This document shows, in pieces, positions 38,229-42,765 of a DNA stretch of 64,000 nucleotides. Where the stretch lies: positions 169,284 through 233,283 of the IMG/VR virus record IMGVR_UViG_3300046536_000256. The stretch is one strand, 5' to 3'. Every line of letters starts with the position of its first letter. Positions within the stretch are counted from its first letter, which is position 1. Under the pieces are notes generated by a model. That model ran no database searches. It saw only the letters and a list, made by a program, of their open reading frames with translations, and had not been told where the DNA came from. The position numbers were made by a program, and so were the translations under genes.

Positions 38229-39731
38229 TTACTTAACGCGGCGAATGGTGCCCAGCGGGATACCGTCGGACAGGTCGGCTACTTCACGGTAGTCGTACGG
38301 ACGGATCAACGGGTTACCGGTGTTGATCAAGAACGCGTACAACGCTTCAATGAAGCTTTCAGTGTAACGGTTGAACAGGGTGTTCACGAAGTCCACCTCT
38401 GGGTCTTCACTACGGGTAGGGTGAGTACCTTCGTGATATTCCCAGGTGATCCAGCTGTTGAGGTCCAGCCCGATGTTGGCGCCAGTGGCAGCTTTGGTGG
38501 TGAGCTTGCGGATAACGTCGTTGGCGACGTCTTGCACCATTTGCTTACCGTATTCCGCACCGAAGCCGTAGATGCGCTTGGTGAAGTGTGTGGCGGCGTA
38601 CAGGATGACTTTCAGCTTCTCATCGAAGCCTTGCTGGATGATCGGGTGCTGACTGAGCATTGCGCGGGTGGTGGCGATCAGTCTGTTGACTTGCTTCTCG
38701 CAGTTGTTAATCTGCTTGGCGGCCACCAGCGCCTTCTTGTCCGGGGTACCGTTCCATTCGAAAATGGTGGTGCCGTTTTCACCCAATGCCACCTGACCGC
38801 TTTCCGGCAACAACGGGGCAACTTTGTCCAGAGTAATGCTCAGGGACTTGAAGTTGTTCTGTGCCTTGAACACCAGGTACAGGTCGTGGTCTTTCTCGAC
38901 GTTGGCGTTGACGAAGACGTTAGCCTTCATGGTTGCGTCACGCAGTTTACCGGTGATCTGCATCTTCAGCTTCTCGGAGAGATTCTCCAGAGCAATGAAG
39001 TCGCCGTTGACCAGATCGTCCATTGGGTCCTTCTCAAACATCGGCGTTTGGAAGAAGGACAGCGGGTACTCTATAGGGAGCTTGGAAACGTTGAGCAGCA
39101 TGCCACGGTCTTTCATGGCTTGCACTGGATTAGTCTCCAAGCACCAGCCGAGGGATTCATCGTCCAGTACAGCTTCCATCCAACGCTCGAAGCGGGATTC
39201 ACGCACGGCAAAGGTGTAGGAATCGGCTTCAGTCTGGTAACGAATAAAGCGAACTTCTTCTTCGCCTACCAAACCCTGATAGGTAAAGATGCACAGTTGC
39301 TGAGGCTGAACCGGGACGAGAACGGTGAAGAACTTGACCAAGCCGTCGTTGCGACGCTGAGCGGCTGGGGTCAGGTCGTTGGTGTAGGGGTGTGCGCGGT
39401 AAGGCAGCGGGTAGATCATGGTCATGTTGTTGACCACGAGCCCGTCATGCGGAACTTCTTGACCTTCCCACAATGCCGGAATGTTGACAAAACCTTTGTT
39501 GGCCAGATCGATCGCGACTTCGGTGAACCGCTGTTCTATTGACGGGCGGTTATCGAAAGCGTCTTGCATAAACTTGATGGTCGAGGCAGGGTCTGGATCG
39601 GCTTCGTCGATGTCGAGCTTAACCACCGGGTCGACCTTGTCGAGTTCGGCGACGGCGTCTTGCATGGTGGGTGCTTGAGCCTTAACAATTTCGTCAAACT
39701 TCTCAGCCATAGGTGATTGGATGTCAGTCAC
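38229..39731 (-). CDS. hypothetical protein
   Basis: 500-aa ORF, GTG start with AGGAG RBS. Confidence 0.8.
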   Translation of the reverse strand: MTDIQSPMAEKFDEIVKAQAPTMQDAVAELDKVDPVVKLDIDEADPDPASTIKFMQDAFDNRPSIEQRFTEVAIDLANKGFVNIPALWEGQEVPHDGLVVNNMTMIYPLPYRAHPYTNDLTPAAQRRNDGLVKFFTVLVPVQPQQLCIFTYQGLVGEEEVRFIRYQTEADSYTFAVRESRFERWMEAVLDDESLGWCLETNPVQAMKDRGMLLNVSKLPIEYPLSFFQTPMFEKDPMDDLVNGDFIALENLSEKLKMQITGKLRDATMKANVFVNANVEKDHDLYLVFKAQNNFKSLSITLDKVAPLLPESGQVALGENGTTIFEWNGTPDKKALVAAKQINNCEKQVNRLIATTRAMLSQHPIIQQGFDEKLKVILYAATHFTKRIYGFGAEYGKQMVQDVANDVIRKLTTKAATGANIGLDLNSWITWEYHEGTHPTRSEDPEVDFVNTLFNRYTESFIEALYAFLINTGNPLIRPYDYREVADLSDGIPLGTIRRVK

Positions 39732-39909: not shown

Positions 39910-42765
39910 ATGATTATGTACAACCCATTCTCGGTTGGTGTAAAACAGACCGGAGTCTATGTTCATGTAACAGGGGTCTCGTTTTACAACCTGGCCAAGG
40001 ACATCGAGAAGTTCTACTCAACGGCACTTGTTACAAAGTATATGATTCGCCGTGAGACCTGGGACACGATCAAAGTCCACAATTTCTTTTTGGTTGAATT
40101 GCATTTCTTACTGGGCGAATTGCTTAAGTTAAAGACCCTGCGCAGCCGTCGTCGTGCTTTGAGTGAACTGCGACAATTACTGGAGACCGAGACTTGGATT
40201 AAGGACACGGTCACTCCTTCGGGCAAACCTTTCGACTTCAAACGATTGGACGCCTTTACCAAGAAGCCTTTCCCGAAACAACAGGAGTTCTTGGAACAGT
40301 ACCCGCTGATCTGTAAGAGTTACCACCTTAAAGGCATCCTGCTGGACTCTGTGCCGGGTTCGGGCAAAGCAATGCCTAAGAGTACCAATGTCAAGGTACC
40401 GGGCGGCTGGAAGCCTCTGGGGTTGATCCAGGTGGGTGACCAAGTGATGACCCCGAAAGGAACGGTCACTCAGGTAGCCGCGGTGCACCCACAAGGTGTT
40501 ACCGAAGTTTATCGCTTTCACTTCGAAGACGGGCGTTGGGCGGACTCTCACCCTGAACACTTGTGGCAGGTGGATGAGATCAGCTACGTTGATGGGGAAA
40601 CCATCATCACCCCCGACAACGTTACCACCACACAAGACATCTTGGATCATTTTCAGGATTACGAGTATCAGATCCCGTTGGTTGGCAAAATCAATGGCTT
40701 GCTGTGCGCTGAAGGGGTTGCCTCCATTGAGGTGGCTGAAGAGTTATTGCTATCAAGTATAGTGATGGACGATCCGGTTTTGGAACTGCCGTACGTTGAA
40801 CGGTTTAACATTGCTAAGGCGATGCTTGGTCGTTCGGGCTGCCAGATCTCTCCAAGGGGCGTTGCGTTCGTTACCACTAACGGAATGGCCGCTTCTAACT
40901 TCCAGTCGTTGATCTGGAGTTTGGGTGGCATCGCTGAGAAGACCGTGTTTAACGACACCAGCTTCCGGATAGATGTCTACCATCAGGACATTGAAGAGTT
41001 GGTCAAAGACCTGCTAGGTCCAAGTCTGCAATTGGATCAAGTCCTTGACTTGTCGGTCTACCAGAACCTGCGGCTGAAGATCGTGGGTGTTGAGAAACGG
41101 GCCAACGAAGAAACCCTCTGCATTACAGTGGATGACGCTGATCACTTGTTTGTGGTGGACGACTACATTGTCACGCACAACACCTTCACGTCGTTGATGT
41201 GGTCGCACCTACTGGGTGATAACAAGACCATCATCATCTGCCCGCTAAATATTGTGGACAGCGTGTGGATGGCTCAGATCAAGGAGCACTTCAAAGTCAC
41301 TCCTCGGATCTGGAACAGCAAGATGGGGATCCCGCTGAACGGTAACTACGATTACTACATCGTACACTACGACGCGCTGGTGGGTCCTCGTTTCGCTTAC
41401 CTGCGGGAATGGATGAAGGACATACTCAGAACGGACAAGAAAAAGTTCAAACTGATTGTGGACGAGTCGCAGAACTTTAACGAGATCACGGCGAAACAAA
41501 CCCAGAACCTGATTGAGTTGGCTGACCTACAATTGTTCAGTGATGCTCTGCCGGTGTCTGGGACGCCGTTCAAGGCGTTGGGGAGCGAAATCTACCCCAT
41601 GCTCTGCATCTTCGACTTGCACTTCGACAGCATCGCTAGGGAGTTCTTTAAAGCGTCGTATGGGCGTAACCGACCTTCGCTCATGGGAATGTTGTCTCAC
41701 CGGATTGGGCGGAGTAAGTTTACCATCCCTGAGTTGTTAGGATTGGGTGATGCGCCAGCGATTGAGATCGTCAAGGTACAGGTCCCGAACAGTGACAAGT
41801 ACACGCTCGACTCGATCAAGCTGGAGATGCAGGTCTACATCCAGGAACGGGTGGCTTTCTACGAAGAACAGATGCCTAAATACATCGCCTTCTTCAATGA
41901 AATCCTGAAAGACTACGAGTTCGACAACATGAAGAATCCGCACGAACTGGAGAACCTGAAGAAGTACCGGGTGATCGTGAAACGGTTCCGTGAGAAAGGG
42001 TACAGCAGCTTTACTGACTCACAGGACAGCATGTTCTGTAAACGGGTAGAGGAGGACATCGAGAAGCGGCTTAGAGGTAAAGATCTCGCAGATTTCCGTA
42101 ATGTGAAGTCCGCAGTGAAGTACCTAGGGTTGAAACTTCGGGGTGAAGCACTCGGTAACGTTCTCGGTCGCGCGCGCATCAATGCGATCAAAGAAACCAT
42201 TGAACACGCCAAGCTCGAAGACTACATCAACGACGTTGAGAAGAAGACGGTGATCTTTACCTCTTACGTTGACGTCCTGAAGCTCTGTGACGAGTACCTG
42301 ACGCGAAAAGGCTTCACTGGGATCACAGTGTACGGTGAAAACAGTAAAGACCGTGACGCGGCGATTAAGCGCTTTGCAGAAGACCCTCGGGTTAACCCAT
42401 TGACCGCGGTGTACGACTCCCTTAAGGAAGGTTACCCGTTGTTGATGGCTAACCAAGAGTTGTTGCTCAATGCCCCATGGCGTGACTTTGAACTGAAACA
42501 AGTTCAAGCCCGCATCTGGCGTACAGGGCAAGATGCTCCATGCTTCTTCCGGATGTTCGATATGGACACTGGGGATAAGGTCAACATCACTACACGCAGT
42601 ATCAACGTGATGGAATGGTCGAAGGAACAGGTCGACGCCTTGTTGGGTCGTAGTGAAGGGCATGCCTTGCTTGCTGACGTTACGGGCGAGGAGATGTTTG
42701 ACATGAGTGACGAAGCGTTTAGTCGTCCAATGTTCCGCAGTAACAGTGTGTTGGATCTGTTCTAA
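39910..42765 (+). CDS. SNF2/DExD-like helicase, intein-containing precursor
   Basis: Walker A PGSGK|T split by an intein, Walker B LIVDESQ, SGTP, QVQARIWRTGQ. Confidence 0.9.
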   Translation: MIMYNPFSVGVKQTGVYVHVTGVSFYNLAKDIEKFYSTALVTKYMIRRETWDTIKVHNFFLVELHFLLGELLKLKTLRSRRRALSELRQLLETETWIKDTVTPSGKPFDFKRLDAFTKKPFPKQQEFLEQYPLICKSYHLKGILLDSVPGSGKAMPKSTNVKVPGGWKPLGLIQVGDQVMTPKGTVTQVAAVHPQGVTEVYRFHFEDGRWADSHPEHLWQVDEISYVDGETIITPDNVTTTQDILDHFQDYEYQIPLVGKINGLLCAEGVASIEVAEELLLSSIVMDDPVLELPYVERFNIAKAMLGRSGCQISPRGVAFVTTNGMAASNFQSLIWSLGGIAEKTVFNDTSFRIDVYHQDIEELVKDLLGPSLQLDQVLDLSVYQNLRLKIVGVEKRANEETLCITVDDADHLFVVDDYIVTHNTFTSLMWSHLLGDNKTIIICPLNIVDSVWMAQIKEHFKVTPRIWNSKMGIPLNGNYDYYIVHYDALVGPRFAYLREWMKDILRTDKKKFKLIVDESQNFNEITAKQTQNLIELADLQLFSDALPVSGTPFKALGSEIYPMLCIFDLHFDSIAREFFKASYGRNRPSLMGMLSHRIGRSKFTIPELLGLGDAPAIEIVKVQVPNSDKYTLDSIKLEMQVYIQERVAFYEEQMPKYIAFFNEILKDYEFDNMKNPHELENLKKYRVIVKRFREKGYSSFTDSQDSMFCKRVEEDIEKRLRGKDLADFRNVKSAVKYLGLKLRGEALGNVLGRARINAIKETIEHAKLEDYINDVEKKTVIFTSYVDVLKLCDEYLTRKGFTGITVYGENSKDRDAAIKRFAEDPRVNPLTAVYDSLKEGYPLLMANQELLLNAPWRDFELKQVQARIWRTGQDAPCFFRMFDMDTGDKVNITTRSINVMEWSKEQVDALLGRSEGHALLADVTGEEMFDMSDEAFSRPMFRSNSVLDLF
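40369..41181 (+). mobile_element. intein (271 aa), Ala1 class-3 type, with a degenerate LAGLIDADG remnant
   Basis: Begins AMPKST after GSGK; block B HPEHLW; block F TLCITV...HLF; ends VTHN followed by Thr(+1). Confidence 0.9.

What the first reader, a model, noticed from the sequence alone, without database searches (positions are those of the whole stretch)
40369..41181. Class-3 (Ala1, W-C-T) intein splitting the helicase Walker A, with a decayed homing endonuclease
Seen: insertion between K and T of GSGK|T; first residue Ala; Trp two residues after the block-B His (EHLW); Cys at block F4 (TLCITV); Thr-His-Asn end. The internal ERFNIAKAMLGRSG...FVTTN...LIWSLGG resembles the second LAGLIDADG half without catalytic acids, and the first half is missing. 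Established: the WCT triplet defines class-3 inteins, which splice through a block-F Cys branched intermediate. Inference: a now-immobile intein that gates ATPase activity on splicing, possibly a redox or condition sensor through the Cys.
Basis: partly seen in the sequence, partly recalled or inferred. Interest (0 to 1): 0.65.

Follow-up and report, generated by a model that had tools for sequence, protein, structure and literature searches.

The report
Class 3 intein in phage helicase
A jumbo-phage helicase gene is interrupted, exactly inside its ATP-binding loop, by a 271-residue self-splicing protein element (class 3 intein) whose homing nuclease has been cut down to a dead half; this is a well-known kind of element, here unannotated but otherwise ordinary.

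Summary
Window 40369-41181 (+) encodes a 271-aa insert between Lys and Thr of the Walker A motif (GSGK|T) of a 949-aa SNF2-type helicase from an EL-like jumbo phage. An intein-less orthologue reads GSGKTF without interruption.

The insert has every class 3 sequence signature: Ala1, His64 (B10), Trp66 (B12), Cys251 (F4), Thr269-His270-Asn271, and Thr+1. All are invariant in 36 orthologous inteins that have diverged to 41% identity.

The model (pLDDT 94) is a Hint fold closest to solved class 3 DnaB inteins. It also carries one LAGLIDADG half-domain.

Profile comparison (97.7%, E 2e-12) shows the middle part is the second half of the nuclease found in related full-size P-loop inteins. The catalytic Asp is replaced by Ser156, and the first half is deleted.

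The element is fixed in a whole phage clade, with no intein-less member. The splicing domain is as conserved as the helicase. The nuclease remnant evolves faster but is still under purifying selection.

I found no support for the redox-sensor idea: only the F4 Cys is conserved.

Verdict: a new, unannotated member of a very common known family. Splicing itself is inferred, not shown.

The parts
39916..40368 (+). N-extein: N-terminal 151 residues of the SNF2-type helicase, ending in the first four residues of Walker A (GSGK)
   Evidence: Orthologues start at this ATG. phrog_62 DNA helicase matches the whole protein at E 1e-106. dN/dS is 0.03-0.10.
40369..41181 (+). Whole intein, 271 aa, Ala1 to Asn271
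   Evidence: exact gap against the intein-less RisingSun orthologue. AF2 model pLDDT 94. PI-SceI matches at Z 21 over 260 aa.
40369..40677 (+). Hint N-lobe (intein 1-103) with block A (Ala1) and block B (His61, His64 = B10 at 40558-40560, Trp66 = B12 at 40564-40566)
   Evidence: These residues are invariant in 32 sequences. The lobe aligns to gp41-1 and to class 3 DnaB inteins. Mean pairwise identity among 36 orthologues is 61%.
40678..41067 (+). Homing-endonuclease remnant (intein 104-233): one helix left from the first half, then a complete second LAGLIDADG half-domain (alpha-beta-beta-alpha-beta-beta-alpha). The block E equivalent AMLGRSG lies at 40819-40839, with Ser156 (40834-40836) at the catalytic Asp position.
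   Evidence: hhalign 97.7%, E 2e-12, to the second half of full-size relatives. The insert-only model has pLDDT 86; its best VIA matches are PI-SceI Z 9.7, PI-PfuI 9.6, I-DmoI 7.2 and I-CreI 5.6. There is no Pfam hit. dN/dS is about 0.08-0.10 and mean pairwise identity 37%.
41068..41181 (+). Hint C-lobe (intein 234-271) with block F (Cys251 = F4 at 41119-41121) and block G (Thr269 = G5, His270, Asn271 at 41173-41181)
   Evidence: These residues are invariant in all orthologues. Cys sits at the same offset in 60 of 60 parsed bacterial relatives.
41182..42765 (+). C-extein: begins with Thr+1 (the Walker A Thr, 41182-41184), followed by the rest of the SNF2 ATPase core and Helicase_C
   Evidence: Pfam SNF2-rel_dom and Helicase_C. 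It is 62% identical to phage EL and 52% to the intein-less RisingSun orthologue.

Best explanation
This is a class 3 intein sitting at the classic P-loop site (between the Walker A Lys and Thr) of an SNF2-type helicase of an EL-like, phiKZ-related jumbo phage.

The helicase is translated as a 949-aa precursor whose ATP-binding loop is split, so it should be inactive as an ATPase. The likely splicing path, by analogy with tested class 3 inteins, is as follows:
1. Cys251 (block F, position 4), assisted by His64, Trp66 and Thr269, attacks the Lys-Ala1 peptide bond and takes the N-extein onto its thiol.
2. Thr+1 takes the N-extein over.
3. Asn271 cyclises with help from His270 and releases the intein.
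4. An acyl shift restores GSGKT and yields a roughly 678-aa active helicase.

The intein once carried a two-lobed LAGLIDADG homing endonuclease, as more distant orthologues at the same site still do. It has lost the first lobe and the catalytic Asp of the second, so it can no longer home. It is now inherited vertically as a fixed passenger.

The remaining half-domain is probably kept because the Hint fold has come to depend on it for folding.

Shown here: position, signatures, fold, homology, clade-wide fixation and purifying selection. Inferred: that splicing happens, the order of chemical steps, and the inactivity of the precursor.
For: Exact insertion against an intein-less orthologue.

A1, H64, W66, C251, T269, H270, N271 and T+1 are invariant in 36 orthologues down to 41% intein identity.

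The Hint lobes are as conserved as the exteins: 61-64% against 63-68% mean pairwise identity, with dN/dS of 0.05-0.10. This is expected only if splicing is needed for an essential helicase.

The model has pLDDT 94. Class 3 Msm DnaBi1 (6bs8) matches at Z 19.3, rmsd 1.6 A over 123 aa, 27% identity.

For the nuclease remnant:
- hhalign gives 97.7% to the second half of full-size relatives.
- No orthologue has the D-x-D-G motif.
- The fold list is dominated by LAGLIDADG enzymes.

Orthologue P0063 has a 341-aa intein with intact GDG and DTDG motifs at the same GSGK|A...THN|T site.

All 37 intein-bearing orthologues form one clade (SH-aLRT 100) with no intein-less member. The nearest intein-less proteins are at most 54% identical.

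The family is widespread: 551 confirmed bacterial relatives. Of these, 60 of 60 parsed have Cys at F4, sit after GK, and have T or S at +1.

Literature:
- Class 3 definition and mechanism: PMC3196547.
- The K|T P-loop site as the 'classic' site: PMC5050341.
- SNF2 helicases as known intein hosts: PMC4760082.
- A P-loop intein abolishes ATPase activity in RadA: cited in PMC6195587.
Against: No experiment or proteomic data shows splicing of this protein.

The WCT signature alone does not guarantee activity. Grafting it onto the class 1 gp41-1 intein gave cleavage rather than splicing (PMC7664689).

Block B position 7 is His here, not the Asp of the DnaB class 3 inteins (PMC6195587).

I did not run a formal phylogenetic test of membership in the monophyletic class 3 clade with class 1 outgroups.

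dS is near saturation (about 0.9-2.7), so the dN/dS values are rough.

Model coordinates could not be inspected, so active-site distances were not measured.
Confidence: 0.85

Rival explanations
1. The intein is a conditional switch. Splicing, and hence helicase activation, would be held back by oxidation, zinc or another signal acting on Cys251, as in mycobacterial DnaBi1. The switch might be coordinated with the two other P-loop inteins of the genome.
For: Class 3 DnaB inteins at the same kind of site are reversibly inhibited by H2O2 and zinc (PMC6195587, PMC7360933, PMC7664689). The intein is retained without loss across a whole clade. Three ATPases of this genome carry related inteins.
Against: The DnaBi1 trap needs a second Cys (Cys48). 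Here only Cys251 is conserved, the other two Cys are variable, and +1 is Thr. Retention is also the default for an intein that has lost its nuclease, because precise deletion is rare. No data bear on conditions.
Confidence: 0.1
2. The intein splices without the block F branched intermediate. This would be a class 2-like direct attack of Thr+1 on the N-terminal junction, or some other route, with the WCT residues being only family heritage.
For: Ala1 is shared with class 2 inteins. No biochemical test has been done on this protein.
Against: Class 2 inteins are so far confined to KlbA and lack WCT (PMC3196547). Cys at F4 is invariant here and in 60 of 60 relatives. Thr is a poor nucleophile for direct amide attack. 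The nearest solved relatives are class 3.
Confidence: 0.04
3. The element is a dead relic: it no longer splices and the helicase gene is non-functional.
For: Curated intein models score below their thresholds. The nuclease part is degenerate.
Against: All catalytic residues are invariant. The exteins and Hint lobes are under strong purifying selection (dN/dS 0.03-0.10). The frame is intact in 37 diverged genomes.
Confidence: 0.03
4. The half-LAGLIDADG domain is still a working part. It could be a homodimeric nuclease, or an exapted DNA- or protein-binding module used before or after splicing.
For: It has a confident fold, purifying selection (dN/dS about 0.1) and four invariant residues: E139, R145, G186, G187. 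Single-lobe LAGLIDADG enzymes such as I-CreI act as dimers (fold match). Two distant orthologues have Glu at the catalytic position.
Against: The catalytic position is Ser in the window, and Ser, Gly, Ala, Thr or Cys in 34 of 36 orthologues. The invariant residues are also conserved in full-size relatives, so they look structural. This region is the least conserved of the protein, at 37%.
Confidence: 0.07

Closest known systems
Experimentally characterised class 3 inteins: mycobacteriophage Bethlehem DnaB, Deinococcus radiodurans Snf2, mycobacteriophage Catera gp206 (as described in PMC3196547)
   Same: No N-terminal nucleophile. The WCT triplet (Trp B12, Cys F4, Thr G5), His B10 and the terminal Asn are present. 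The hosts are phage-derived helicase-type ATPases, including an Snf2 protein. They carry a LAGLIDADG-type middle domain.
   Different: Those inteins are about 330-345 aa with four nuclease motifs. This one is 271 aa with only the second half, and that half is catalytically dead. Splicing was demonstrated for them and not for this one. I could not read the primary papers, so I did not compare their insertion sites.
Class 3 DnaB P-loop mini-inteins with solved structures: M. smegmatis DnaBi1 (6bs8) and M. chimaera DnaB1 (6rix/6riy)
   Same: The insertion lies between the Walker A Lys and Ser/Thr. The Hint fold matches (Z 18-19, rmsd 1.6-2.2 A, 24-27% identity). The Cys-His-Thr plus Trp catalytic set is the same (PMC7664689).
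   Different: They have only a disordered linker where this intein keeps a folded half-nuclease. They have Asp at B7 where this one has His61. DnaBi1 has the regulatory Cys48, which is absent here (PMC6195587).
Orthologous inteins at the same site: Pseudomonas phage EL gp166 (262 aa) and 36 metagenomic EL-like phages
   Same: Same gene, same site, same reduced architecture; 41-100% identical.
   Different: None in kind. In public records the EL protein is labelled only 'putative ATP-dependent helicase domain' or 'DarB-like antirestriction', and no intein is annotated.
Full-size intein at the same site in more distant orthologous helicases (for example P0063, 341 aa)
   Same: Same GSGK|A...THN|T junctions. 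The helicase is orthologous (41% identity in the C-extein). The Hint blocks are homologous.
   Different: It keeps both LAGLIDADG motifs (GDG and DTDG) and about 75 more residues, so it may still be mobile. The window's copy is the degenerate end state.
PI-SceI (VMA1 intein) and other LAGLIDADG intein endonucleases
   Same: Overall two-part architecture. PI-SceI matches at Z 21 over 260 of 271 residues, and the insert alone at Z 9.7.
   Different: PI-SceI is a class 1 intein (Cys1) with a complete, active two-lobed nuclease and an extra DNA-recognition region. Sequence identity is only 11-15%.

Membership tests
Intein (Hint-fold protein-splicing element) | In-frame insertion in a conserved host protein, absent from orthologues | tested here: met
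   RisingSun and more than 70 other orthologues read G-x-G-K-T/S without interruption. The gap equals the 271 residues.
Intein (Hint-fold protein-splicing element) | Hint fold with splicing blocks A, B, F and G, a terminal His-Asn, and a nucleophile at +1 | tested here: met
   Model pLDDT 94. Z is 15-21 to many solved inteins. The THN|T junction was read directly.
Intein (Hint-fold protein-splicing element) | Actual excision with ligation of the exteins | not testable with these tools
   Supported only indirectly, by invariant catalytic residues and purifying selection.
Class 3 intein | No Ser/Thr/Cys at intein position 1 | tested here: met
   Ala1 (GCA at 40369). Ala is present in 36 of 36 orthologues.
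Class 3 intein | WCT triplet: Trp at B12, Cys at F4, Thr at G5 (definition in PMC3196547 and PMC5050341) | tested here: met
   Trp66, Cys251 and Thr269 are invariant in all orthologues and in the two paralogous inteins of the genome.
Class 3 intein | His at B10 | tested here: met
   His64 is invariant.
Class 3 intein | Membership of the monophyletic class 3 clade | tested here: inconclusive
   The best sequence and fold matches are class 3 DnaB inteins, plus gp41-1. 60 of 60 bacterial relatives share the signature. No tree with class 1 outgroups was built.
Class 3 intein | Block F Cys branched intermediate during splicing | not testable with these tools
   Needs biochemistry (C251A, N271A and T+1A mutants).
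Class 2 intein | Non-nucleophilic position 1 without WCT; found in KlbA only (PMC3196547) | tested here: not met
   WCT is present and the host is an SNF2 helicase.
Active LAGLIDADG homing endonuclease | Two LAGLIDADG helices (or a homodimer), each ending in a catalytic Asp or Glu | tested here: not met
   Only the second half is present. The catalytic position is Ser156. Block C is absent. LAGLIDADG_3 gives no hit even at E 10.
LAGLIDADG fold (descent from such a nuclease) | alpha-beta-beta-alpha-beta-beta-alpha half-domain homologous to that of related inteins | tested here: met
   DSSP of the models. hhalign 97.7%. 16 of the top 16 VIA matches are LAGLIDADG-fold proteins, with Z from 9.7 down to 5.1. 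Foldseek alone gave no hit below E 1e-3.
Redox-trapped conditional intein (Msm DnaBi1 type) | A second Cys able to form a disulfide with the catalytic Cys | tested here: not met
   Cys113 and Cys158 are not conserved and lie in the nuclease remnant. +1 is Thr (PMC6195587).

The most novel reading that the evidence does not exclude
The dead half-nuclease and the intein as a whole have been exapted. Three related class 3 inteins split the P-loops of the terminase and two helicases of this nucleus-forming-type jumbo phage. Together they could act as a common post-translational timer or stress switch for DNA transactions. Alternatively, the excised intein, with its conserved LAGLIDADG half-domain, could have a DNA-binding role of its own.
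Probability: 0.08. Interest if true: 0.6.

Novelty: new member of a known kind. Interest (0 to 1): 0.25.

Why it matters
The main value is for annotation. The helicase of phage EL and its relatives is deposited without any intein feature and under misleading names, and curated Pfam and NCBIfam models miss the element. Predicted protein sizes, domain maps and proteomics searches for these jumbo phages are therefore off by about 30 kDa.

It is also a clean natural example of the late stage of the intein life cycle. The same site holds full-size, half-deleted (271 aa) and further eroded (233 aa) versions in related phages. That series could help define how much of the nuclease a class 3 intein needs in order to fold.

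It does not change what is known about intein mechanisms.

Tried and rejected
- Megablast of the gene against phage records found nothing. tblastn was needed.
- Pfam and NCBIfam gave only sub-threshold intein hits, and nothing for the nuclease remnant.
- Foldseek with the insert alone gave no hit at E <= 1e-3 (best was I-DmoI at 2.2e-3). The all-against-all VIA search was more informative, but its Z values (at most 9.7) are middling. I therefore rest the LAGLIDADG assignment mainly on the hhalign result.
- I checked for an out-of-frame or antisense nuclease, as described for some actinophage inteins (bioRxiv 10.1101/2025.01.02.630785). The four alternative ORFs inside the intein have no family match, and GC content is flat across the insert.
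- A tblastn of the intein against the window found no second intein there.
- The primary class 3 papers (Tori and Perler 2011; Brace 2010) are not held, so the definitions come from PMC3196547, PMC5050341 and PMC7664689.
- Literature searches found no report of inteins in phage EL or phiKZ-like helicases.
- The Spearman correlation of intein against extein divergence (0.55-0.58) is only weakly informative, because the pairs are not independent.
- I did not build, fold or search the joined (spliced) extein sequence.
- The reads tools and the complex prediction were not used, because they cannot bear on protein splicing.
Full report
**What is there**

The window is the last 64 kb of a 233,283-bp IMG/VR virus record with direct terminal repeats. 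The ORF at 39910..42765 (+) encodes an SNF2-type helicase. It matches phrog_62 'DNA helicase' at E 1e-106 and Pfam SNF2-rel_dom and Helicase_C just above their cut-offs.

Its C-terminal 527 residues are 62% identical to gp166 of Pseudomonas phage EL. They are 44-52% identical to helicases of other phiKZ-like jumbo phages such as RisingSun, Miami, OBP and Vibrio phages. Those proteins are variously annotated 'DNA helicase', 'RapA-like RNA polymerase-associated protein', 'virion-associated SNF2-domain helicase' or 'DarB-like antirestriction'.

Relatives start at the ATG at 39916, which gives 949 aa.

**The observation**

Reading the DNA confirms the stated coordinates exactly. GSGK is followed by Ala (40369). 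The insert ends Thr-His-Asn (41173-41181), and the next codon is Thr (41182).

Aligned with the RisingSun orthologue, which reads GSGKTF, the gap is exactly these 271 residues. More than 70 other orthologues also have an uninterrupted G-x-G-K-T/S.

- His64-Leu-Trp66 (block B positions 10-12).
- Cys251 in TLCITV (block F position 4).
- Thr269 (block G position 5), followed by His270 and Asn271.

**Is it an intein, and of which class?**

Sequence searches:
- phmmer against solved structures finds gp41-1 (E 1.3e-5; its WCT-grafted variant at 1.8e-8) and the class 3 DnaB inteins of M. smegmatis (6bs8, E 1.6e-5) and M. chimaera (6rix/6riy).

Structure:
- An AlphaFold2 model built on 32 sequences has mean pLDDT 94.
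- The Hint part superposes on 6bs8 with Z 19.3, rmsd 1.6 A over 123 residues and 27% identity.
- PI-SceI covers 260 of 271 residues at Z 21.

Class 3 inteins are defined by the absence of a Ser/Thr/Cys at position 1 together with Trp B12, Cys F4 and Thr G5. Cys F4 acts as the first nucleophile and as the branch point (PMC3196547, PMC5050341, PMC7664689). All of these sequence criteria are met.

Conservation across relatives:
- A region-restricted search of 5.8 billion proteins found 36 clusters of orthologous helicases with the same intein at 41-100% identity.
- In these, A1, H61, H64, W66, C251, T269, H270 and N271 never vary.
- In the 60 loci I could parse, the element always follows the GK of a Walker A, always has Cys at the F4 offset, and has Thr (54) or Ser (6) at +1.

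So this belongs to the very common 'P-loop' class 3 family. Kelley et al. call the K|T position the 'classic' P-loop insertion (PMC5050341). Novikova et al. list SNF2 (HepA) helicases among known intein hosts (PMC4760082).

**The middle domain**

Relatives fall into two size classes: about 340-365 aa and about 227-292 aa.

The large ones carry Pfam LAGLIDADG_3. They show both motifs: block C as L-G-x-L-L-G-D-G and block E as G-L-M-D-T-D-G.

In the window, block E corresponds to A-M-L-G-R-S-G (intein 151-157). The catalytic Asp is therefore Ser156. Block C and about 75 residues of the first lobe are missing, and only what looks like the last helix of that lobe (intein 119-128) remains.

Supporting evidence:
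- A local hhalign of the 36-sequence insert profile against the nuclease profile of 40 full-size relatives gives 97.7% probability and E 2.3e-12. It aligns insert residues 25-107 to columns 93-187 of 207, which is the second half.
- Folded alone, the insert (pLDDT 86) has the alpha-beta-beta-alpha-beta-beta-alpha topology.
- In an exhaustive structural search, its top 16 matches are all LAGLIDADG-fold proteins: PI-SceI Z 9.7, PI-PfuI 9.6, TliVMA 8.5, WhiA 7.2, I-DmoI 7.2, down to I-CreI 5.6.
- The Z values are middling and Foldseek alone was not significant. The homology call therefore rests mainly on the profile comparison.
- None of the 36 orthologues has the D-x-D-G motif. Two distant ones have Glu at the catalytic position.
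- No alternative-frame nuclease is hidden in the intein.

**Evolutionary state**

On a maximum-likelihood tree of C-exteins (116 proteins), all 37 intein-bearing relatives of the window form one clade (SH-aLRT 100) with no intein-less member. The sister groups lack the intein. The nearest intein-less proteins in the database are at most 54% identical.

A more distant orthologue, P0063 (41% identity in the C-extein), has a 341-aa intein with both motifs intact at the same junctions. Within the clade, one member has eroded further, to 233 aa. A separate Vibrio-phage clade has 227-228-aa inteins at the same site, interspersed with intein-less genes.

Together these fit the usual intein life cycle: invasion, fixation, then nuclease decay.

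Mean pairwise identity among the 36 orthologues:

| Region | Identity |
|---|---|
| N-extein | 68% |
| C-extein | 63.5% |
| Hint lobes | 61% and 64% |
| Nuclease remnant | 37% |

Against the two closest relatives, dN/dS is 0.04-0.10 in the exteins, 0.05-0.10 in the Hint lobes and 0.08-0.10 in the remnant. dS is about 0.9-2.7, so these values are rough.

The splicing domain is thus as constrained as the helicase itself. The remnant evolves two to three times faster at the protein level but is not neutral.

**Mechanism**

Inferred from family membership, the precursor has a split P-loop and should not bind or hydrolyse ATP. A P-loop intein abolishes ATPase activity in P. horikoshii RadA (cited in PMC6195587).

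Cys251 attacks the Lys-Ala1 bond, the N-extein passes to Thr+1, Asn271 cyclises, and the Walker A motif is restored. Nothing here shows that splicing is conditional.

The redox trap of M. smegmatis DnaBi1 uses a disulfide between the catalytic Cys and Cys48 (PMC6195587). This intein has no conserved second Cys, and its +1 residue is Thr. Oxidants or zinc could still modify a lone catalytic thiol, but that would hold for any class 3 intein.

**Caveats**

- Splicing was not observed.
- The WCT triplet is necessary but not sufficient (PMC7664689).
- Class 3 monophyly was not formally tested.
- Model coordinates could not be inspected for active-site geometry.
The N- and C-exteins were searched separately by reference.

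**Verdict**

This is a correct and carefully read finding of a known kind of element: a new, unannotated member, together with its orthologue in the model phage EL, of the class 3 P-loop intein family, caught at the degenerate-nuclease stage. Interest is modest.

Noticed in passing
Outside the window, same genome: G000:C1:116768-117526 (-), = L004:1501-2262 (-): A second class 3-type P-loop intein (254 aa, GFGK|A...CPEHQW...TTCIAV...LVTHN|T, 33% identical to this one). It sits in another helicase (770 aa, phrog_16 DNA helicase). Its block E equivalent reads D-A-T-G, so its nuclease is also degenerate.
   Followed up: partly
Outside the window, same genome: G000:C1:153951-154844 (-), = L005:913-1854 (-): A third related intein (314 aa, starting with Met, RQQGK|M...AEHLW...ATCIEV...IVTHN|T) splits the Walker A of the large terminase (phrog_2). 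Three ATPases of one phage therefore carry class 3 P-loop inteins.
   Followed up: partly
L004:2713-3672 (-), directly upstream of the second intein-bearing helicase: This 319-aa ORF contains an N-H-x-D-G...N-L-E-W stretch that looks, from memory, like an HNH homing-endonuclease motif. It may be a free-standing homing endonuclease next to an intein-bearing gene. I did not search it.
   Followed up: no
L001 (Pseudomonas phage EL, NC_007623.1 167602-170424, gp166): The model phage EL carries the orthologous 262-aa intein, but its records label the protein only 'putative ATP-dependent helicase domain' or 'DarB-like antirestriction'. tblastn reports 4 intein-like places in the EL genome.
   Followed up: partly
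Proteins P0034 and P0037 (orthologues, 253-aa inteins): These two distant orthologues have Glu at the position of the catalytic Asp in the block E equivalent (M-M-E-Y-E-G). Every other member has Ser, Gly, Ala, Thr or Cys there. It is unknown whether this matters for a single-lobe domain.
   Followed up: no
Proteins P0102 (233-aa intein) against its sister P0022 (268 aa); P0127, P0133, P0136 and P0064 (227-228 aa) against intein-less P0126 and P0130: The remnant is still eroding within the clade. In a Vibrio-phage clade, small inteins at the same site are interspersed with intein-less alleles, which points to recent gain or loss there.
   Followed up: partly
window 39910-39916: The ORF finder starts at the ATG at 39910. 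All 36 orthologues begin at the equivalent of the ATG at 39916 (M-Y/F-N...), which is the more likely start.
   Followed up: partly
window 38229-39731 (-): The divergently oriented neighbour (500 aa) matches only phrog_23926, of unknown function (E 1e-48). The same neighbour arrangement is seen next to the helicase in EL and RisingSun.
   Followed up: no
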